DNA of 64,000 nt from positions 62,001 to 126,000 of the IMG/VR virus record IMGVR_UViG_3300032236_001850; one strand, written 5' to 3'. The notes beneath the pieces were generated by a model that had not been told where the DNA came from, did no database searches, and saw nothing but the letters and a program-made list of their open reading frames with translations. The translations under genes and the position numbers were made by a program. The first letter of the stretch is position 1. Each line of letters starts with the position of its first letter. Of the stretch, positions 3,441 through 19,332 are shown piece after piece.

Positions 3441-3872
3441 ATGGCATCGGAAATGTTAGAAAAGATGAGAGCTTTCATGGAATCTCCAGAGGGTGTAGCT
3501 TCAATTGAAAGAATGAAGGCCAAAATGCAGAGGGAAGAGGACAGGAAGCGTAGAGCCTTCGAGTATATCGAGAGCCTATCCAGAGAGGAATTCGAATCCA
3601 AGCTGGCAAAAGAAATTGCTAGACATGATGATGCATACGAAAGAAGATGTTACGCTAAAGGCCACATGCCGCATCCAAGAAATCTGATGTACTTTGTATT
3701 CAATGCTGCTGAAATAGGCGGAAGACCTTATAACAAACAACTTGACAGCTTCGATGCAAGTTTTGGTGGTGGATCTATTAAATATAGAGGTCACTACTTC
3801 AATTGGATATTTGGACAGGGAACTGTTCTAAGAATATTCAATCCAAAAAAAGAATGTATTTTTTCACTATAA
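3441..3872 (+). CDS. hypothetical protein
   Basis: 143 aa ORF after promoter. Confidence 0.8.
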   Translation: MASEMLEKMRAFMESPEGVASIERMKAKMQREEDRKRRAFEYIESLSREEFESKLAKEIARHDDAYERRCYAKGHMPHPRNLMYFVFNAAEIGGRPYNKQLDSFDASFGGGSIKYRGHYFNWIFGQGTVLRIFNPKKECIFSL

Positions 3873-3883
3873 AACCAAATAAA

Positions 3884-4081
3884 ATGGCAGTAACTAAACA
3901 AAAATTTTTAATTACCTCAAGTGGTAAAATTAATGCTCAGGAAGAAGTTGACGCTGTTCTGAATGACGGATGGAGAATCATCTCAGTAACACCAAGAGCA
4001 GTATCGACCGGTAAATCCGGCGTAACCGAGCATGGTGCATTCGGAATTCTATTTGAAAAATTCTTTCCGGAAGAAAATTAA
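3884..4081 (+). CDS. small hypothetical protein (DUF4177-like)
   Basis: Start reassigned to ATG 3884 (MAVTKQKF); LNDGWRIISV motif typical of DUF4177-like proteins. Confidence 0.55.
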   Translation: MAVTKQKFLITSSGKINAQEEVDAVLNDGWRIISVTPRAVSTGKSGVTEHGAFGILFEKFFPEEN

Positions 4082-4086
4082 CGGAC

Positions 4087-4329
4087 ATGGAAGATTCCTC
4101 TCAAAATCTAGAAATTCACGAGGCAGCGGATAGAATATATCCACTGATGGCCAATTACAGCTTTGATGCACAGGAAGAGATTATAAGGGATTTGCTGAGG
4201 GTGATCTACACAAGAAAACTCGATAGTAAAAAATATCATAAAGAGCATCTGGATATAGCAACAGAGCAATCGGAAAAAATGAAAGAAAAATACCCATTTA
4301 TATTTATAAAACAGGATGAAAAACTTTAG
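4087..4329 (+). CDS. hypothetical protein
   Basis: 80 aa ORF in operon. Confidence 0.7.
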   Translation: MEDSSQNLEIHEAADRIYPLMANYSFDAQEEIIRDLLRVIYTRKLDSKKYHKEHLDIATEQSEKMKEKYPFIFIKQDEKL

Positions 4330-5164
4330 CCTTGGTGATCGTATGAAGGAATTCTACGAAGACCGTTTTAGATATTATGTTCCACGCAGAACATACACAT
4401 TAATCAGAATTGACGGGAAAGCCTTCCACACCTACACAAAAGGTTTGGAGTCACCATTTGATGCAGGATTAATTGCAGACATGAATGAGACTACTGCCTA
4501 CCTTTGTAAAAATATTCAAGGTGCAAAATTTGGCTATGTTCAATCGGATGAGATCAGCATACTTATTACTGATTTTGATGAGAGAGACACCCAGATGTGG
4601 TTTGACGGAAATCTACAAAAGATGGCTTCTGTTGCAGCTTCTATGGCTACATCAAAATTCAACGAATTAAGAGTAGTCAGAGTCCTTAGAAAATACGAAT
4701 GCCAATTTGATACACCATTACAAATGGACACCGATTCGATATTAGAATTTCTTTCTAAGATTAAAAAAGCGGAGTTCGATGCTAGAGTATTTCAGATTCC
4801 ACAAAAAAGCGAGGTTGAGAACTATTTCATCTTCAGACAACAAGACGGTACCAGAAACTCCGTCCAGTCGGTTGCTCAGAGCCTATATTCACAAAGTGAA
4901 TTAAATGGCAAGAAGGAGAAGGATATGCAGGAGATGATTTTTCAAAAAGGTATCAACTGGAATGATTACCACTTCAGAGAAAAAAGAGGTGGAATTATTG
5001 CTAAGGTTCCGACAATGATGGAGGGTAAGAATGGTCAGGTTGAAAGACTGAAATGGCAAATGATTCCAACTCCTATATTCACTCAGGAGAGAGAATTCAT
5101 GGACATTATGATTCCAGAGTTTGAAATTAAATCACCTAAATCTGAAGAAGTTGAGGTACAATAG
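4316..5164 (+). CDS. thg1: tRNA-His guanylyltransferase Thg1-like 3'-5' polymerase
   Basis: Motifs IRIDGKAFHTYT, YVQSDEISIL, FDARVF, YFIFRQQD, GINWNDY. Confidence 0.92.
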   Translation: MKNFSLGDRMKEFYEDRFRYYVPRRTYTLIRIDGKAFHTYTKGLESPFDAGLIADMNETTAYLCKNIQGAKFGYVQSDEISILITDFDERDTQMWFDGNLQKMASVAASMATSKFNELRVVRVLRKYECQFDTPLQMDTDSILEFLSKIKKAEFDARVFQIPQKSEVENYFIFRQQDGTRNSVQSVAQSLYSQSELNGKKEKDMQEMIFQKGINWNDYHFREKRGGIIAKVPTMMEGKNGQVERLKWQMIPTPIFTQEREFMDIMIPEFEIKSPKSEEVEVQ

Positions 5165-6062: not shown

Positions 6063-6437
6063 ATGACAGATAAAATATTTCTTTTTATTCTGCTAATACA
6101 CTTTCTAGCAGATTTCGCATTACAAACTGACGATCAAGCAAAGGGTAAAAGCACAGATCCAAAATGGTTAACCTACCACGTTGCTGTTTATTCTGTGATA
6201 TGGTTGATGGCTTCCTGGTTTTATTTTGGAGATTTCAGACAAGCAGCATTCTTTGCAATTGTCACTTTCATCTCCCACTGGTTTACCGATTTCATTACCA
6301 GCAGAATAGGAAAGCCTTTCTGGGACAAAGGTGATTACCACAATGGGTTCGTTGTTGTTGGGTTTGATCAGATCCTACATTATCTTCAATTATGGTACAC
6401 ATTTAAAATCATATTGGAAATAAATGGGACAATATAA
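6063..6437 (+). CDS. DUF3307-like membrane protein
   Basis: LIHFLADFALQT, H..V, SHWFTD, GFDQILH motifs. Confidence 0.75.
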   Translation: MTDKIFLFILLIHFLADFALQTDDQAKGKSTDPKWLTYHVAVYSVIWLMASWFYFGDFRQAAFFAIVTFISHWFTDFITSRIGKPFWDKGDYHNGFVVVGFDQILHYLQLWYTFKIILEINGTI

Positions 6438-6663
6438 CGAGAATCACAAGAAAAAGAAAATCAAAAAGGAGATACAAAAGTGTATAGAATCTCCCGAATA
6501 TTTTCGAGAAAACTATATTGGAATTATTGATCCAGAGACCTACGAGAAGGCATTTCCAAAAATAAAGGAAGGCTTTGAGGGCAAGGTGATAATAACATCA
6601 ACACCTAACGGAGACACACATTTTAAGGACCTTTGGGAAAAAAGCAAAAAAGATTCGGAATAA
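6424..6663 (+). CDS. 79 aa terminase-large-subunit-like miniprotein
   Basis: IQKCIESPEYFRENYI (gp17-like N-terminus) fused to KVIITSTPNGDTHFKDLW (gp17 ATPase coupling region). Confidence 0.6.
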   Translation: MGQYNENHKKKKIKKEIQKCIESPEYFRENYIGIIDPETYEKAFPKIKEGFEGKVIITSTPNGDTHFKDLWEKSKKDSE

Positions 6664-6664
6664 A

Positions 6665-6697
6665 TTTTTTTATTTCGAATCTTTTTTTTATATTTGC
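6665..6697 (+). promoter_or_regulatory. early/host-sigma promoter
   Basis: TTTTTTTATTTCGAA...TATATTTGC. Confidence 0.8.
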
Positions 6698-6712
6698 ATA
6701 TAATTTAATGAT

Positions 6713-7459
6713 ATGAACGAAGAATTATTTAATAAAGCACTTCCCAAATGGCCAGCAATAGTAGTTGTTGGTGAACCTGTCACTGAACAACAAGCCATGG
6801 CTATCAATGTTATGACAGACAGATTTAGTTTCTGCACAAATGACAGAAAGTTTGAAAAACAAATTCATAAATTGATCTATGAAGTTGATGAATCCTGGAG
6901 CGATCTCACTGATGCACTCAAGGAAAAACACAACACTGATTTCAATGGAGCATGGGACATAAAAGAATCAATCTCAAAAAAATACGGAGCTCTAGAACTT
7001 AACTACATGAGTAATTCCAGAATCGTTTCTTCATGGCTTGGCGGACCACACGGATGGTGCAACTGGGACGGCACAATAGGATCAAGCAACTATAATATTG
7101 GTAAATGGCCTAGTGTTCGCGATGTTTATGAAGACTGCGTTAAGATAGCAGAAGCCTTTCCTTTCCTTAATATGAAAGTGCAATTGATGAACCAGGAGGC
7201 TGGAGAAGACGACGAACAACTGGAAGTCATTGTTGAGTACTCAATAAAAGATGGCGAAGTCGACATGTACGAACCAACAGAAATTCTAAAAACCCCTGCC
7301 TTTGGTAGTGCTGATATGTATGCCAGATTTAATAATCCACATGCCGAAAGAGGATGCACAATAGAAAAACTGGAGGAAGCTCTGAAAGTTAGTGAATTAT
7401 ATTCGTCAACCAAAGAGAGACTATACAAAAACGAATTTTGGAACAAATTAGAATCATAA
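6713..7459 (+). CDS. hypothetical protein
   Basis: 248 aa ORF after promoter. Confidence 0.85.
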   Translation: MNEELFNKALPKWPAIVVVGEPVTEQQAMAINVMTDRFSFCTNDRKFEKQIHKLIYEVDESWSDLTDALKEKHNTDFNGAWDIKESISKKYGALELNYMSNSRIVSSWLGGPHGWCNWDGTIGSSNYNIGKWPSVRDVYEDCVKIAEAFPFLNMKVQLMNQEAGEDDEQLEVIVEYSIKDGEVDMYEPTEILKTPAFGSADMYARFNNPHAERGCTIEKLEEALKVSELYSSTKERLYKNEFWNKLES

Positions 7460-7471
7460 AAAATAAAAGCA

Positions 7472-8404
7472 ATGGTATTAAATCTTTCTGAACCGTGCAG
7501 CTACGGTATCAAATTCAAAGTCTCTAAATTTCCTGATGGACAACAAGCCATCACTATATTAGAGGGAGAAGTTCTCAAATACAACATGTTTGAGAAATTG
7601 GAACCCGTGGTAATAAAATCAAGAATAACATCCTTCTTGGATCTTGAGTTAGTTATCTGTGCAAATAGAGCTCTTAAGGAACTTGGTGTTAAAGAAACTT
7701 CACTCGAGATATCATATTTATTGGGTGCAAGATCCGATAGAAAATTCGAAACCGGAAGCGTTAATTACATCAAGGAGATACTTGCTCCAATCATCAACGC
7801 ACAGAATTTTTCAAGAGTAACGGTACTTGATCCACATTCGGACGTAACTGAAGCGTGTATCAACAACTTCAAAAAGGAAACTCAATGGAGTCAAGGGTTG
7901 ATAACATTTGTGCTACGTGATTATTTCGTCGGTGGAAGCACGGACTATTCCAAAATGAGATTAGTATCTCCGGATGCTGGTGCTCTTAAGAAAGTTTATG
8001 ATGTTGCCGAGTCTATCGGGTATAGTCACGACATAGTTATAGCATCGAAACACAGAGATGTTAAAACTGGAAAAATCACACACACTGATGTTCCAATCTC
8101 GGTACATGACGTGGATAAAGATTTCTTCATACTGGATGATATTTGTGACGGTGGTAGAACCTTTATCGAGATTGCTAAGGCAATCAAAACGAAACAATCA
8201 ATTTCCAGCGCGGTTCATCCAGAGAATCACGGTAAGATTTTTCTGGTTGTAACACATGGAATATTCTCAGCAGGTTTAAAACCACTAAATGAATATTTCG
8301 ATGGTATTTATACAACGAATAGCTATGTTGATATGGCTGATCCTGAATTCTCATTAAGAAACGATAATGAGATGCACAAACTTAAACAATTAAAAGTTAT
8401 CTAA
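7472..8404 (+). CDS. prs: ribose-phosphate pyrophosphokinase family protein (PRS or NARP1 Adps-like)
   Basis: KFPDGQ, YLLGARSDRKF, LDPHSDV, VSPDAGALK, ILDDICDGGRTF, VTHGIFS. Confidence 0.9.
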   Translation: MVLNLSEPCSYGIKFKVSKFPDGQQAITILEGEVLKYNMFEKLEPVVIKSRITSFLDLELVICANRALKELGVKETSLEISYLLGARSDRKFETGSVNYIKEILAPIINAQNFSRVTVLDPHSDVTEACINNFKKETQWSQGLITFVLRDYFVGGSTDYSKMRLVSPDAGALKKVYDVAESIGYSHDIVIASKHRDVKTGKITHTDVPISVHDVDKDFFILDDICDGGRTFIEIAKAIKTKQSISSAVHPENHGKIFLVVTHGIFSAGLKPLNEYFDGIYTTNSYVDMADPEFSLRNDNEMHKLKQLKVI

Positions 8405-9866: not shown

Positions 9867-10067
9867 ATGGCAACATTAAGCGAAGAAAACGCAGAACAAT
9901 TATTTGCGGAAATCGACAACGAGGGACTAGGTTACTGGACTCAACATTATGGATATAAGGGAGAGGAAGATCCCAAGCTAAGGGAGCTTTGCGAAAAAGC
10001 TAAAAAAGCTATGAATGAGCTGGATTCTCATATTCAGGCTATTTTCGATGAATATGGAATAGGTTAA
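9867..10067 (+). CDS. hypothetical protein
   Basis: 66 aa ORF. Confidence 0.7.
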   Translation: MATLSEENAEQLFAEIDNEGLGYWTQHYGYKGEEDPKLRELCEKAKKAMNELDSHIQAIFDEYGIG

Positions 10068-10914
10068 AATCATTTTCCCATATTGACACAATATTATAAC
10101 CAAGATCATTTAGATATTTTTCCCTGATCTTGGTTTTTCTATATAAATCACCAAATTTAGTATTATTTACGACATTCACGTCATCATGTCCGTAAATATC
10201 AGGATTTCCGTGCCAGAAATCGCCATTAAATTCATACACAGTTTTTGTCTTGCTACAATATCCATCAACAATATATTTACCTATTCTAACCTGTCTTTCC
10301 TTTATATTCAACGAATCCAACCAAAGATTTTCTTTCACACCAAATCTATCACCACATTTTGGGCATCCCTGTCCGTTAATGTGGTTTCTAGTACGTTGCT
10401 TAAATTCTCCATGCTCCCTACATACTATGGTTATCTTTGTCCTAAGATTTGAATATTCAACCAATGAATAATCATATTTTTCACCATGCACAGATCTAAA
10501 TAGGGATTTTATTTTTTCTGAGTGTATTCTTGTTGATTCTCTTGCACATTTATCACAAGTTCTTCCGCTTAAGTGATTAGCTGGGGATTGTCTGAATTCT
10601 CCATGTTTCTTGCATATTATAGTTACGTGTGGGAAAGATCCATTATATTCCACTTTGGAATAGTCATATTTGTTCCCATGAACTTCAATCGCTCTGTTGA
10701 TGAAGTTTGGATCCTTTGGTTTCATTCTTCTGCATTGATTGCATCCTATACCCCTCATATGATTACTTGCTCTCTGTACAAATCTCCCATGAACTTTGCA
10801 TAATATATTTACCATGGATTGATTGTTTTTATAATCAGCTTCAGAATAATCATACTTATCGCCATGAATACTAACTGAAGCCTCAATAAAATCAGATTTT
10901 GTCAGTTTTTTCAT
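10039..10914 (-). mobile_element. free-standing homing-endonuclease-like gene (repeated Zn-ribbon modules + PD-(D/E)XK/Vsr-like nuclease)
   Basis: Three HGxKYDYSxxxY...IxCxxHGxFxQxxxNHxxGxxCxxC repeats; C-terminal YIVDGY...YEFNGDFWHG...IVSIWE; opposite strand to flanks. Confidence 0.8.
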
Positions 10915-11139: not shown

Positions 11140-12213
11140 ATGGAAAATAATAAAAAGTTTTTAAAGAACTATTTAGATGCATTCTCCCCCGTAGGAAAAG
11201 AATTTGAAGGACAGAAAATTTGGATTGATTACGTTAGACCCTTTGTTAATGAAATGAGAGTAGATGCTTATGGTACAGCATACGGTCTTATCAAGGGAAC
11301 AGGAGAAAAGAAAGTAATCTTGGAAAGCCACGTTGATGAAATTTCCTGGATTGTGACAGAGATAGAATCAAATGGAATGATCCGGGTTAAAACTAATGGT
11401 GGATCAGACAACATGATTGCCCCATCAATGACAGTGCTTGTCCACACTCACGAGGGTAAAAAGATACCTGGAGTTTTTGGATGGCCTGCTATCCACGTTA
11501 GAGAAAAAAGAGTTGAGATGGGACCGGAAGTTCACGAACTTTGGGTTGACCTTGGAGTTGACACTGCAAAGAAAGTTGCAAAACTTGGTGTTGAGGTTGG
11601 AAACTGCGTTACTTTTGACCAACCTTTCTTTGAACTTGGTAAGTATTACGTTGGTAGATCACTAGACAACAAAATTGGTGGATATATCATCGCAGAGGTT
11701 GCAAGAGAGCTTAAAGAAGAGGGTACGGTTTTACCATTCGACCTTTACATCGTTAATGCTGTCCAGGAGGAAGTTGGTTTATTTGGAGCGAGATTGATTG
11801 CTCAAACAATTAAACCAGACATCGCATTGGTTCACGATGTTACACACAACACAAACTCTCCTAAGATGAACAAAGCCAAATCTGGTGATGTTAAGGGAGG
11901 TGCAGGTCCGGTTATCGAGTATTCATCTCAAAACCACAAAGACCTAATCAAGATTGTTAGAGACGTTGCTAAGAAAAAAGAAATCCCTATGCAGCTGTCT
12001 GTTGGATCATACGGAAACGACACTGTTTCTTTCTTCCTTGAAAACGTCCCTACGGTGATCGTAGCGAGTCCGTTGAAGTATATGCATACTACAGTAGAGA
12101 TGGTTCACAAAGATGACGTAGCGGCTGCAATACAAGTTTTTAAAGAGACATTAAAGCAGTTGACTACAGGTACTATCGTTACCATCAACGACCAAACACA
12201 TAAATACGTATAA
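11140..12213 (+). CDS. M42 family metallo-aminopeptidase
   Basis: ESHVDEI, SLDNKIG, VQEEVGL, HDVTH, LKYMHT metal-ligand motifs. Confidence 0.9.
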   Translation: MENNKKFLKNYLDAFSPVGKEFEGQKIWIDYVRPFVNEMRVDAYGTAYGLIKGTGEKKVILESHVDEISWIVTEIESNGMIRVKTNGGSDNMIAPSMTVLVHTHEGKKIPGVFGWPAIHVREKRVEMGPEVHELWVDLGVDTAKKVAKLGVEVGNCVTFDQPFFELGKYYVGRSLDNKIGGYIIAEVARELKEEGTVLPFDLYIVNAVQEEVGLFGARLIAQTIKPDIALVHDVTHNTNSPKMNKAKSGDVKGGAGPVIEYSSQNHKDLIKIVRDVAKKKEIPMQLSVGSYGNDTVSFFLENVPTVIVASPLKYMHTTVEMVHKDDVAAAIQVFKETLKQLTTGTIVTINDQTHKYV

Positions 12214-12473: not shown

Positions 12474-12644
12474 ATGGCAAGAATAGAAATCAAAGATCTA
12501 AAATTAAGCTCAATCATTAAGAGGTGTGAGTCTTTAAAATTAGATCCAAAGAGGGTCAAAATAGAAACCGCAATATTCGAGGACATATCAAACCCCGACA
12601 TGTATTACACTAAACTATATTTAAAATATGAAAACAACAAATAA
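12474..12644 (+). CDS. small hypothetical protein (56 aa, not in ORF track)
   Basis: MARIEIKDLKLSSIIKRCESL..., overlaps NADAR start. Confidence 0.55.
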   Translation: MARIEIKDLKLSSIIKRCESLKLDPKRVKIETAIFEDISNPDMYYTKLYLKYENNK

Positions 12645-13107
12645 ATACGTATTTTTCTGGAATGGGATATACTCGCAGTGGCATAAAGCAAATATGACCA
12701 TTGACAGAATAGAATATAATTCATGTGAACAGTACATGATGCATCAAAAAGCAATGCTCTTTGGCGACGAGGAAACTGCAGAATTAATCATGCAGGAAAA
12801 AAATCCAAGAGAGCAAAAGAAATTTGGTAGAAAGATTCAGGGATTCGACAAAGCAATCTGGGACAAGAACTCATTGGCCATAGTTTATCGTGGCAACCTT
12901 GCTAAGTTCTCACAGAACGAGGGTTTAAAAAAGGAGCTTCTTGCAACAGGAGACAGAATCCTTGTTGAAGCATCCCCGGTTGATAACATTTGGGGAATAG
13001 GTCTAGATGAAAAAGCAAAAGGTGTGGAAGATCCAGCAAATTGGAAAGGTCTAAACCTATTAGGTCAAGCAATAACACTTGTGAAAAATGAACTTCGAGG
13101 AGCTTAA
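12628..13107 (+). CDS. NADAR (YbiA-like) family protein
   Basis: FFW...SQW, EQYMMHQKAMLFGD, KKFGRKI, KFSQN, LVEASPVDNIWGIG, NLLGQAI. Confidence 0.93.
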   Translation: MKTTNKYVFFWNGIYSQWHKANMTIDRIEYNSCEQYMMHQKAMLFGDEETAELIMQEKNPREQKKFGRKIQGFDKAIWDKNSLAIVYRGNLAKFSQNEGLKKELLATGDRILVEASPVDNIWGIGLDEKAKGVEDPANWKGLNLLGQAITLVKNELRGA

Positions 13108-17646: not shown

Positions 17647-19332
17647 ATGAATAAATTAAACGAAACTTTTAAAATCAACCCGCTTTACGAATCTGACGGG
17701 TACAAAGTTGGCCACAAAGCAATGTTGGCAGAAAACACTTCAGTTGAATATTGGACTTGGATCCCTAGAAGCATCAAGTACATGCACCCATCAATCGATG
17801 GTATCATGTCAGCAGGTGAACAGCTAGTTTGGAGATACATCCACAGCAACTTCCAGGAGTTATTCTTCAACAAACCAGTGGAAGCTGCAGAAAAATTCGG
17901 AAGAGACATGGCTGCATATCTTATGATGGATTACGACGCCGATCATTTTGTGGAACTTCATAAACTTGGATATCTTCCAGTTAGAATCAAAGCCATTCCT
18001 GAAGGGACATTTACAAAACCAAATATTCCACACATGACAGGAATCAACACAGTTGATGGTTATGCTTGGCTTGGACTTTACTTAGAAACTTTGGTTTCTA
18101 AGTTGGCTTGGCAATTACCAACTGCTGCTACCATCGCACACAGATTCAAACAGAATGCTGTTGAATGGGTTACCAAAACAGATCCAGAGAATCTTTGGTT
18201 AGCTGATTTCATGTGTCACGATTTCCACAGTAGAGGTGGTAACCCTTTCACCTCGATTGCAGTTGGTTTAGGACATGCCATGAGTAATTCAGGTAGCGAC
18301 ACATTAAATGTTATTCCAGCATCAAGATACTACTACGATTTTGATGAGAACGAGGTTCCTGTCTATAGTGTTAATGCTTCAGAGCACAGTGTGACATGCA
18401 CAGGTATTTTCTTCTACGAGAAAAAATTAAGAAGCGGTTTATTAAACCACGAAATTGTTTCTTACTACACAAGCACTGCACCTTCAGAGGGATCAGTTCA
18501 GGATCCTGACTATTTAGCAATTGCTGAATTACTTAATCTTCGTGATTGGTTGGAAAAATTTCCTAAAGGTATTCTTTCAGTTGTTTCTGACACGATGAAT
18601 CTATGGAAGGTGATCACTCACATCCTACCAAGACTTAAAAAAGAAATCCTTGCAAGAGATGGCAAATTGGTAATTAGACCTGACAGTGGAGACCCAGTTG
18701 ATATCATTTGTGGAACAACAACTATTAATAACAAGTGGGTAGAAGGAATACTTCCGCAATCTGAGTGTGAAAAGAAAGGTGTAATAGAACTTCTTTGGGA
18801 CATCTTTGGAGGTGAAGAAACTTCAACTGGATACAAAAGATTAGATTCTCACATTGGAGCAATCTACGGGGATTCAATCAACTTAGAAAGACAAATCGCT
18901 ATCTACACAAGATTAGCAGATAAAGGATTTTCAGCTACAAACATCGTGGTTGGTGTTGGTTCTTACACGTATGTTATGCTAACGAGAGACTCCGCTGGAT
19001 ATGCAGCTAAAGGAGCTTGGTTCGCTACTAAGGAATTTAACGGTGTTGATCCTGATGGTCAAACCGATTATATCACAACGGAGTATAACATCTACAAAGA
19101 TCCAGTAACTGATAACGGTACTAAAAAATCATTAAAAGGTTTCTGCCAGGTATTCAATAATAGACCAGATGCTTTACCTCACGAGATTAAGTACGACGGT
19201 AAGGATCAATTGGAAGTAAACACCGAATGCACTAAGGATCAAGAAGCTGGTGGTTTATTAAATATCATCTACGAAGATGGTAAATTCTATAATCAAGTCA
19301 CACTAACAGAGATTAGAGAAAGATTAAAATAA
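17647..19332 (+). CDS. nadV: nicotinamide phosphoribosyltransferase family (NAMPT or NARP1 Namat-like)
   Basis: SDGYKVGH, HDFHSRG, NASEHSVT, SVVSDT, LVIRPDSGDP, IYGDSI, KKSLKG. Confidence 0.93.
   Translation: MNKLNETFKINPLYESDGYKVGHKAMLAENTSVEYWTWIPRSIKYMHPSIDGIMSAGEQLVWRYIHSNFQELFFNKPVEAAEKFGRDMAAYLMMDYDADHFVELHKLGYLPVRIKAIPEGTFTKPNIPHMTGINTVDGYAWLGLYLETLVSKLAWQLPTAATIAHRFKQNAVEWVTKTDPENLWLADFMCHDFHSRGGNPFTSIAVGLGHAMSNSGSDTLNVIPASRYYYDFDENEVPVYSVNASEHSVTCTGIFFYEKKLRSGLLNHEIVSYYTSTAPSEGSVQDPDYLAIAELLNLRDWLEKFPKGILSVVSDTMNLWKVITHILPRLKKEILARDGKLVIRPDSGDPVDIICGTTTINNKWVEGILPQSECEKKGVIELLWDIFGGEETSTGYKRLDSHIGAIYGDSINLERQIAIYTRLADKGFSATNIVVGVGSYTYVMLTRDSAGYAAKGAWFATKEFNGVDPDGQTDYITTEYNIYKDPVTDNGTKKSLKGFCQVFNNRPDALPHEIKYDGKDQLEVNTECTKDQEAGGLLNIIYEDGKFYNQVTLTEIRERLK

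What the first reader, a model, noticed from the sequence alone, without database searches (positions are those of the whole stretch)
6424..6663. 79 aa mini-terminase with Walker A/B precisely removed
Seen: the gp17-like N-terminal CxxxPxYFxxNY segment is joined directly to the post-Walker-B FP.I..G...KVIITSTPNG...F..LW segment. The frame is open with a normal start and stop. A clean in-frame internal deletion looks more like a selected minimal binding surface than random decay.
Basis: partly seen in the sequence, partly recalled or inferred. Interest (0 to 1): 0.6.

Follow-up and report, generated by a model that had tools for sequence, protein, structure and literature searches.

The report
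Conserved terminase-derived micro-protein in huge phages
A freshwater huge phage carries a real, evolutionarily conserved 79-residue gene made of two non-adjacent pieces of the DNA-packaging enzyme (large terminase) with the whole ATP-burning core missing; its job is unknown, and my guess is that it acts as a terminase look-alike that binds some partner.

Summary
ORF 6424-6663 (+) encodes 79 aa. Residues 12-36 match the TerL helix before the Q motif and Walker A (hhalign E 2.5e-10). Residues 35-76 match the post-Walker-B helix, the motif III strand and loop (KVIITSTPNG) and the next helix (E 3.6e-13).

In full TerLs these two segments lie 127-146 aa apart. Here they abut. The TerL N-terminus, subdomain II and the nuclease domain are also absent.

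It is not decay:
- 13 same-length homologue clusters share 76-96% identity.
- The gene sits in conserved synteny.
- dN/dS is 0.04-0.22 at dS 0.3-1.9.
- A covarying intrinsic terminator follows the gene.
- Relatives at 38-51% identity show the same fusion, and about a dozen small proteins in other contigs, three of them looked up and phage-like, carry only the motif III module.

The phage (434.5 kb) also has a full TerL and a 261-aa ATPase-only TerL paralogue.

Function is untested. The best-conserved piece is a core strand, which an AlphaFold2 model leaves extended and unpaired. I therefore favour a mimic of unfolded TerL core, acting as a decoy or competitor for TerL-reading factors such as Upx/Avs-type sensors. 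A role in modulating TerL itself is the main rival. The selection claim is supported; the binding-surface claim is unproven. I found no description in the literature.

The parts
6424..6663 (+). Mini-TerL gene, 79 aa (P0001). The start overlaps the stop of the upstream gene by 14 nt.
   Evidence: ORF and translation. 13 homologue clusters of 78-79 aa. dN/dS 0.04-0.22.
6457..6531 (+). Residues 12-36: homologue of the TerL helix that precedes the Q motif and Walker A (E..KC..SP.YF..NY). It keeps the TerL-invariant E, C, Y, F and Y.
   Evidence: hhalign of A5 against A4: E 2.5e-10, aligned to own TerL 62-85. T4 gp17 105-128. 68% identity to the L014 TerL. TerL invariant columns.
6526..6651 (+). 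Residues 35-76: homologue of the TerL post-Walker-B helix, motif III strand and loop, and the following helix.
   Evidence: hhalign of A1 against A4: E 3.6e-13, aligned to own TerL 219-260. T4 gp17 271-300. phrog_2.
6583..6612 (+). KVIITSTPNG, the ATPase coupling motif (motif III) strand and loop. It is the best-conserved element of the wider mini family.
   Evidence: Alignments A1, A3 and A6. Codons differ from those of the own TerL gene, so there is no gene conversion. Modelled as extended and unpaired by AlphaFold2.
6646..6687 (+). Intrinsic terminator hairpin followed by a T-run. It overlaps the last codons (KKDSE*) and ends the transcription unit.
   Evidence: Consensus scan. Conserved in 8 loci with compensatory changes in L006, L010 and L011. 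-19.7 kcal/mol, z -7.2.
6688..6712 (+). Almost invariant intergenic stretch (TATATTTGCATATAATTTAATGAT) before the next gene. It is probably that gene's promoter or leader.
   Evidence: Alignment of 8 loci. The motif is not repeated elsewhere in the window.
6063..6437 (+). Upstream gene, a DUF3307 membrane protein of 124 aa. It appears translationally coupled to the mini gene in this clade but not in the L019 clade.
   Evidence: Pfam PF11750. phrog_2470. Synteny.
6713..7459 (+). Downstream 248-aa protein of unknown function. It follows the mini gene at every locus where the downstream gene is homologous to it (L003, L006, L007, L009, L011 and L019).
   Evidence: 53% identity to the L019 neighbour. 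No Pfam or PHROG hit. Weak Atlas lead to DUF1281.

Best explanation
SHOWN. The ORF is an intact gene under purifying selection in a clade of freshwater huge phages. Its product is a chimera of two non-adjacent TerL segments: the helix before the Q motif and Walker A, and the helix-strand-helix module that carries motif III. It lacks the Q motif, Walker A, Walker B, subdomain II and the nuclease domain, so it cannot hydrolyse ATP, translocate DNA or cut DNA. It keeps every residue that is invariant in those two segments of the aligned full TerLs. The gene closes a transcription unit in an auxiliary region far from the packaging genes.

INFERRED. The best-conserved element, K-V-I-I-T-S-T-P-x-G, is a strand that by general knowledge of ASCE ATPases lies in the core of folded TerL. 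In the mini it has no intramolecular partner. The protein therefore most likely works by protein-protein contact, as a mimic of unfolded or nascent TerL core or of the TerL active-site loop.

My preferred version: it acts as a decoy or competitive ligand for host factors that read the conserved TerL core. The best precedent is Upx, which is predicted to bind unfolded TerL core strands by beta-augmentation. Avs-type sensors are less likely targets. Occupying the sensor without supplying the full trigger would blunt TerL-triggered abortive infection.

Confidence that it is a selected TerL-derived micro-protein is about 0.9. Confidence in the decoy mechanism is about 0.3; the confidence field gives the latter.
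For: Identity and selection.

Homology of both segments and mapping of the missing core.

Not self-folding, with the strand exposed:
- AlphaFold2 with 14 alignment rows gave pLDDT 51.
- With 55 rows it gave pLDDT 80 but pTM 0.39, with residues 44-65 extended and unpaired.
- Foldseek found no match in the PDB.

Location: the gene is at genome position 68.4 kb and the full TerL at 264 kb.

Neighbourhood of auxiliary genes, some of them of NAD/ADP-ribose families:
- Thg1-like and a Prs-like phosphoribosyltransferase.
- NADAR.
- A NAMPT-like gene.

Contexts of module-only relatives: the three looked up are stand-alone small genes among early or auxiliary genes, with no TerL-family gene among the called neighbours and no shared neighbour, which fits a universal target.

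Literature (PMC13601566):
- TerL is a major trigger of Avs1-3 and Upx.
- AlphaFold 3 models suggest Upx binds a locally unfolded TerL ATPase core (strands beta1, 4, 5 and 6) by beta-augmentation.
- The TerL-like accessory protein vs.8 of T4 is discussed there as a possible anti-defence protein.
Against: - No binding or phenotype has been tested.
- The host is unknown, so it is unknown whether it carries a TerL sensor.
- Avs sensors envelop the whole folded target core (PMC13581612), and Avs2 needs the ATP-bound ATPase pocket. A 79-aa fragment without Walker A or B would mimic these poorly.
- The unfolded-state binding by Upx is itself only an AlphaFold 3 model. It is described as independent of sequence, which does not explain why the mini keeps T-S-T-P-x-G so strictly.
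- A fragment that binds a sensor could trigger it rather than block it.
- No RNA data exist for expression or timing.
- The 'counter-defence island' context is only guilt by association.
Confidence: 0.3

Rival explanations
1. Modulator of a TerL-type ATPase, a 'microprotein' or dominant-negative. The mini binds the phage's own TerL, the 261-aa TerL paralogue, or the TerL of a co-infecting phage. It would do so through its core strand and flanking helices, for example by strand complementation during folding. The effect would be to delay or tune packaging, or to poison a competitor's motor.
For: - The mini keeps exactly the TerL-invariant residues of both segments, including the T-S-T coupling motif.
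- This lineage maintains three TerL-family genes, and the triad is conserved in a sister 430-kb phage.
- The mini profile scores foreign T4-like TerLs at 35-48 bits but the own TerL at only 22.6 bits, with 46-56% against 31% identity in the C-module. That would fit a competitor-directed target.
Against: - The gene lies in an auxiliary region about 196 kb from the packaging genes.
- The retained strand is a core strand in folded TerL, not an outer interface.
- The short segments cannot resolve origin or target.
Confidence: 0.25
2. Exapted fragment with a function unrelated to terminase. Examples: a client-like ligand or adaptor for host chaperones, since the basic-aliphatic-Thr pattern K-V-I-I-T resembles DnaK-binding peptides; or a small Lys-rich nucleic-acid-binding protein.
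For: - The N- and C-termini are Lys-rich.
- One module-only relative (P0090) has a 4-Cys N-terminal extension. It overlaps a J-domain protein gene by 20 nt and sits near peptide deformylase and trigger factor homologues.
- No conserved phage-encoded neighbour is shared across the wider family.
Against: - The chaperone link rests on a single locus and on a pattern recalled from memory.
- It does not explain why the TerL-invariant polar residues S-T-P-x-G and the N-helix C/Y/F/Y are all retained across relatives at 38-51% identity.
Confidence: 0.15
3. Non-functional relic: a decaying pseudogene left by a TerL duplication, intein or homing-endonuclease traffic, or an ORF open by chance.
For: - TerL genes often carry large insertions, probably inteins, between the same two segments (127-146 aa apart in most TerLs, 278-874 aa apart in others).
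- TerL fragments that run into intein-like sequence exist in the databases (P0047, P0091).
- A homing-endonuclease-like gene lies 3.4 kb away.
Against: - dN/dS is 0.04-0.22 at dS up to about 1.9.
- Start, stop and length are conserved in 13 or more clusters and in distant lineages.
- A conserved terminator with compensatory changes follows the gene.
- The position is syntenic.
Confidence: 0.03

Closest known systems
Large terminase subunit of T4-like phages (gp17; Pfam Terminase_6N PF03237, PHROG 2)
   Same: Both segments are homologous to TerL and colinear with it. The TerL-invariant residues of the pre-Q-motif helix and of motif III (T/S-T/S-T-P-x-G) are retained.
   Different: It lacks the Q motif, Walker A, Walker B with the catalytic Glu, subdomain II and the nuclease domain. 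It gets no Pfam hit. It is 79 aa against about 600 aa. It lies outside the packaging module.
T4 vs.8, a TerL-ATPase-like accessory protein (PMC13601566)
   Same: It is a phage-encoded accessory protein derived from the TerL ATPase domain, distinct from the packaging TerL. Its function is unknown and its authors discuss it as a possible anti-defence factor. The 261-aa paralogue of this phage (L018) is the nearer analogue of vs.8.
   Different: vs.8 keeps a complete ATPase fold with Walker A and B and activates Avs2. The mini keeps only one core strand and three or four helices and cannot form that fold.
Ksap1/Ksap2, small phage proteins that activate Avs2 (PMC11564622, PMC13601566)
   Same: They are small lineage-specific phage proteins that structurally resemble part of the TerL ATPase, and a TerL sensor reads them.
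   Different: Ksap proteins have a folded 4-6-stranded sheet and no reported sequence homology to TerL. The mini has clear sequence homology but no sheet. Ksap proteins are triggers, and whether the mini is a trigger, a blocker or neither is unknown.
Eukaryotic microProteins (own knowledge, not tested here)
   Same: They are short proteins derived from a larger multidomain protein. They keep an interaction element, lack the catalytic or functional domains and act by titrating partners.
   Different: The concept comes from plant and animal transcription factors. No interaction has been shown for the mini.

Membership tests
Functional large terminase (TerL, T4 gp17 type) | Walker A P-loop (G/S-x-x-x-x-G-K-S/T) | tested here: not met
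   The motif is absent from the 79-aa sequence. The alignment places the whole PRQVGKS region of the own TerL in the gap.
Functional large terminase (TerL, T4 gp17 type) | Walker B with catalytic carboxylate (hhhhDE) | tested here: not met
   Absent. LYMDE of the own TerL falls in the deleted stretch.
Functional large terminase (TerL, T4 gp17 type) | ATPase coupling motif III (S/T-S/T-T after a hydrophobic strand) | tested here: met
   K54-VIITSTPNG-63 aligns with T4 gp17 KIIITTTPNG and own TerL RIIITSTPNG.
Functional large terminase (TerL, T4 gp17 type) | C-terminal RNase H-like nuclease domain | tested here: not met
   The protein ends 8 residues after the helix that follows motif III.
Functional large terminase (TerL, T4 gp17 type) | Reaches the Pfam Terminase_6N gathering score | tested here: not met
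   No terminase family is reported by Pfam even at E <= 10. Only PHROG, PDB and profile-profile searches detect the homology.
TerL ATPase-domain-only accessory proteins (vs.8-like) | Complete ASCE ATPase fold homologous to the TerL N-domain | tested here: not met
   About 133 core residues are missing. The AlphaFold2 model has no sheet.
Small terminase subunit (TerS) | Homology to a TerS family, or a gene adjacent to TerL | tested here: not met
   There are only weak hits of res 5-37 to phrog_5110 (best E 0.006, in 6 of 14 members). The gene is about 196 kb from TerL.
Anti-defence decoy of TerL sensors (hypothetical class) | Binds a TerL-sensing immune protein and blocks its activation | not testable with these tools
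The host and its sensors are unknown.
Protein-coding gene under selection | dN/dS well below 1 with conserved reading frame across diverged copies | tested here: met
   21 pairwise comparisons gave dN/dS 0.036-0.222. All 14 sequences in the alignment (the window's copy plus 13 homologues) are 78-79 aa with the same start and stop.

The most novel reading that the evidence does not exclude
Huge phages encode a family of 'terminase-core mimics'. These are micro-proteins that display the most conserved TerL element, the motif III strand and loop, with or without the pre-Walker-A helix, in an unfolded state. They would act as decoys that blind host immune sensors recognising TerL, in particular Upx-type sensors that read unfolded TerL core strands. 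This would be the first phage countermeasure aimed at terminase-sensing immunity.
Probability: 0.2. Interest if true: 0.85.

Novelty: new variant of a known kind. Interest (0 to 1): 0.6.

Why it matters
TerL is the most conserved protein of tailed phages and a main trigger of bacterial pattern-recognition immunity (Avs1-3, Upx). No phage countermeasure aimed at terminase sensing turned up in my literature searches.

A conserved family of tiny proteins that keeps only the invariant core pieces of TerL is a concrete, cheap-to-test candidate. The tests are co-expression with known sensors and triggers, pull-downs, and packaging assays.

Even if it proves to be a packaging modulator instead, it would show that phages make microprotein-style derivatives of their own motor. 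It would also explain a class of small 'hypothetical' ORFs in huge-phage genomes. The family additionally marks which TerL elements stay under selection outside the enzyme.

Tried and rejected
- **Complex prediction.** Mini plus own TerL residues 55-330 returned no answer: score 0.00 against a mark of 0.32, and the controls were not run. This is evidence neither for nor against binding.
- **AlphaFold2 with the shallow 14-row alignment.** pLDDT was 51, which is uninformative. The deeper 55-row alignment gave locally confident helices but pTM 0.39. Foldseek against the PDB found nothing.
- **Pfam on the mini.** No terminase hit.
- **Missing core encoded elsewhere as a complementary fragment.** The genome-wide phrog_2 search found only the full TerL, a complete ATPase-domain paralogue and a PhoH-like ATPase.
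- **Gene conversion with the own TerL.** Codons differ across the shared motif.
- **Fusion or frameshift with the upstream DUF3307 gene.** In the L019 lineage a different gene precedes the mini.
- **Repeated promoter motif.** The conserved intergenic sequence is unique in the window.
- **Expression data.** Only DNA runs (pond, freshwater, viral metagenomes) hold the locus and no RNA run was found.
- **Literature searches.** Searches for terminase decoys, mimics, fragments and mini-terminases found nothing relevant.
- **Downstream 248-aa neighbour.** Only a weak Atlas lead, DUF1281-like at score 0.82.

Full report
**1. What is there.**

The window is positions 62001-126000 of a 434,509-bp virus record with direct terminal repeats, a huge phage. 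ORF 6424..6663 on the + strand runs from ATG to TAA and encodes 79 aa (P0001).

Its ATG overlaps the stop of the upstream DUF3307 membrane-protein gene (6063-6437) by 14 nt. This overlap may partly account for the invariant first five residues.

Directly after the gene lies a 19-bp hairpin followed by a T-run (6646-6687). It overlaps the last codons and folds at -19.7 kcal/mol, z = -7.2. It is conserved in eight related loci, with compensatory changes in L006, L010 and L011. The mini gene therefore closes a transcription unit. The 25 nt that follow are almost invariant and precede the next gene.

**2.

Several independent searches detect terminase similarity in both halves:
- PHROGs gives only terminase families. 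phrog_2 matches res 36-76 (E 2.5e-4) and phrog_5989 matches res 10-38 (E 1.4e-3). All 14 family members hit phrog_2 and 11 of 14 hit phrog_5989.
- Against the PDB the only significant hits are T4 gp17. Res 44-73 align with gp17 271-300, where KIIITTTPNG carries the TTT coupling motif. Res 12-35 align with gp17 105-128.
- Profile-profile comparison with a 30-sequence TerL alignment gives 97.9% probability, E 3.6e-13, for res 35-76 against own TerL 219-260. It gives 96.8%, E 2.5e-10, for res 12-36 against own TerL 62-85.
- A full TerL on an unrelated contig (L014, P0016) carries EIKKCSESLDYFRENYVKI, 68% identical to mini res 16-34.

Caveat: the TerLs in alignment A4 were picked from hits of the mini profile, so these E-values are somewhat favoured. 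The L014 match is independent of that selection.

Scoring the mini profile on full TerLs shows the two matched segments 127-146 residues apart in most. In others they are 278-874 residues apart, with large insertions, probably inteins, between them. In the mini they are contiguous.

The joint alignment places the Q motif (LRDYQ), Walker A (PRQVGKS) and Walker B (LYMDE) of the phage's own TerL entirely in the gap.

The TerL columns that are invariant in the 30-sequence alignment map onto the mini as follows:

| Own TerL | Mini |
|---|---|
| E66 | E16 |
| C70 | C20 |
| Y76 | Y26 |
| F77 | F27 |
| Y80 | Y31 |
| P229 | P45 |
| S243 | S59 |
| T244 | T60 |
| G247 | G63 |

The near-invariant (>=90%) TerL columns P245 and F251 correspond to mini P61 and F67.

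The protein also lacks the first ~60 residues, subdomain II and the whole nuclease domain of TerL. The retained C-terminal piece is specifically the ATPase coupling motif, motif III (role of the motif: PMC9958956).

**3. It is a selected gene, not decay.**

The word search found 13 clusters of 78-79 aa at 76-96% identity. Their alignment has 34 invariant columns.

Six homologous loci were fetched. In five of them the gene sits between the DUF3307 gene and a ~248-aa gene. The sixth contig, L011, starts about 255 nt upstream of the mini and shows only the downstream gene.

Nei-Gojobori estimates over 21 pairs give dN/dS 0.036-0.222 with dS 0.30-1.89. The DUF3307 gene gives 0.02-0.09 and the downstream gene 0.03-0.15.

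The full-library profile search and a second word search revealed more distant relatives:
- **Two-segment minis with the same fusion.** P0018, P0021, P0022, P0085-P0088 and P0093 are 78-85 aa. Those aligned to the window's protein (P0018, P0021, P0022, P0085) are 38-64% identical to it.
- **P0018 context.** It lies in a syntenic but diverged context on L019: Thg1, then the mini, then a 271-aa protein 53% identical to the 248-aa neighbour, then a phosphoribosyltransferase and DUF3307. Vertical descent from one ancestral deletion is therefore likely for the window clade and the L019 lineage.
- **Module-only minis.** About a dozen proteins of 52-73 aa carry only the motif III module. Examples are P0089, P0092, P0095-P0098, P0075 and P0079. 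Two others, P0090 and P0094, have extra parts.
- **Module-only contexts.** The three contexts looked up are stand-alone small genes among early or auxiliary genes on phage-like contigs of 17-55 kb, with no shared neighbour and no TerL-family gene among the called neighbours.
- **Artefacts set aside.** P0047 and P0091 are TerL fragments that run into intein-like sequence and are not part of this family.

No deposited phage genome in the GenBank collection holds a full-length match.

**4. Genomic setting.**

The phage's packaging TerL (P0002, 608 aa, Terminase_6N E 1.5e-19) lies at G000:C1:264006-265832, about 196 kb away.

It scores only 22.6 bits against the mini profile. The best foreign TerLs score 35-48 bits. 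C-module identity is 31% to the own TerL against 46-56% to T4-like TerLs. Codons in the shared IITSTP motif differ between the two genes. The mini is thus not a recent copy of the resident TerL, and gene conversion does not maintain it.

A third TerL-family gene lies at L018:1387-2172(-), which is G000:C1:196460-197245. It encodes 261 aa and is an ATPase-domain-only paralogue (phrog_5989 E 1.9e-17; T4-like TerLs E down to 3e-16). Its Walker A is degenerate (PRQTGLSS, no Lys). A sister 430-kb phage has the same triad.

The genes around the mini are auxiliary:
- Thg1-like, 4316-5164.
- Prs-like phosphoribosyltransferase, 7472-8404.
- M42 peptidase, 11140-12213, and NADAR, 12628-13107.
- NAMPT-like, 17647-19332.

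The DNA occurs in pond, freshwater and viral metagenomes, and no RNA run holds it.

**5. Structure.**

AlphaFold2 with the 14-row family alignment gave pLDDT 51.

A 55-row alignment that added distant minis and local TerL segments gave pLDDT 79.6 but pTM 0.39. It shows helices at 6-22, 24-31, 37-43 and 66-76. Residues 44-65, including KVIITSTPNG, are extended with no pairing partner. Foldseek found no PDB match.

By general knowledge of ASCE ATPases, the motif III strand is a central, buried strand of the sheet. A protein that has only this strand cannot form the fold on its own.

**6. How it most likely works.**

Shown: the protein is a selected, non-catalytic TerL derivative, with the features set out in sections 2, 3 and 5.

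Inferred: it acts by binding something that recognises those elements. A core strand is not a native outer surface of TerL. The partners that could 'see' it are therefore those that deal with unfolded or nascent TerL, with the active-site face, or with a TerL-like fold during folding.

The 2026 study of terminase sensing (PMC13601566) reports the following:
- Avs2 binds the folded, ATP-bound ATPase domain.
- Upx is activated by the ATPase domain alone. AlphaFold 3 predicts that it binds a locally unfolded ATPase core (strands beta1, 4, 5 and 6) by beta-augmentation.
- T4 encodes a TerL-ATPase-like accessory protein, vs.8, of unknown and possibly anti-defence function.

On this basis I favour a decoy or competitor for TerL-reading host factors, at about 0.3.

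Against this model:
- Avs sensors envelop whole folds (PMC13581612).
- The Upx mode is only modelled and is said to be sequence-independent.
- The strict retention of T-S-T-P-x-G is not explained.
- The host is unknown.

Rivals:
- A microprotein-type modulator of the phage's own or a competitor's TerL (0.25).
- An exapted function, such as engaging chaperones. One relative, P0090, is translationally coupled to a J-domain gene (0.15).
- A relic (0.03), which the selection data contradict.

The single complex prediction (mini plus TerL 55-330) returned no answer and counts for nothing either way.

**7. Comparison with known families, and novelty.**

The mini fails the defining tests of a functional TerL. 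It has no Walker A, no Walker B, no nuclease domain and no Pfam hit. It is not a vs.8-like complete ATPase domain, and it is not a TerS. It is homologous to TerL but is not a member of the enzyme family in any functional sense.

Searches of the paper library found no description of terminase-derived mini-proteins, mimics or decoys.

I rate it a new variant of a known kind, namely TerL-derived accessory proteins.

Noticed in passing
L018:1387-2172 (-) = G000:C1:196460-197245 (outside the window): A 261-aa TerL paralogue that has only the ATPase domain. Walker A is degenerate (PRQTGLSS, no Lys), Walker B reads FVDD and motif III reads IGTT. It is conserved in a sister 430-kb phage. It is analogous to T4 vs.8, but its catalytic lysine is lost.
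   Followed up: partly
window 10039-10914 (-): A free-standing gene that looks like a homing endonuclease (DUF723/DUF4379 zinc finger plus a DUF559 Vsr-like nuclease). It is inserted between the 66-aa gene and the M42 peptidase gene. It is absent at this position in L003, L006 and L007.
   Followed up: partly
window 4316-5164, 7472-8404, 12628-13107, 17647-19332: A cluster of auxiliary genes: Thg1-like tRNA-His guanylyltransferase, a Prs-like phosphoribosyltransferase, NADAR and a NAMPT-like protein of 561 aa. Together they suggest NAD+ salvage or reconstitution, reversal of ADP-ribosylation and tRNA repair.
   Followed up: partly
window 6688-6712: Almost invariant intergenic sequence TATATTTGCATATAATTTAATGAT between the terminator and the next gene. 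It contains a TAnnTTTG-like element, which from memory is the Bacteroidota -7 promoter motif and so a possible hint to the host. The sequence is unique in the window.
   Followed up: partly
L025:3210-3845 and 3826-4107: In another phage-like contig (54.9 kb) a motif-III-module mini (P0090, 93 aa) has a 4-Cys N-terminal extension. It overlaps the end of a J-domain (DnaJ) protein gene by 20 nt. Peptide deformylase and trigger factor homologues lie nearby.
   Followed up: no
proteins P0026, P0031, P0034, P0036-P0038, P0044, P0045, P0057, P0065, P0073; P0047, P0091: Many full TerLs have 278-874 residues, instead of about 135, between the two segments that the mini retains. This points to large insertions, probably inteins, in the Walker A to Walker B region. 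Some database 'proteins' are TerL fragments that run into intein-like sequence beginning CV..T.
   Followed up: no
window 6713-7459 and L019:3069-3884: A protein of 248-271 aa and unknown function follows the mini gene at every locus where the downstream gene is homologous to it, and is 53% identical between the two lineages. It has no Pfam or PHROG family and only a weak Atlas lead to a DUF1281-like ferredoxin-like fold.
   Followed up: partly
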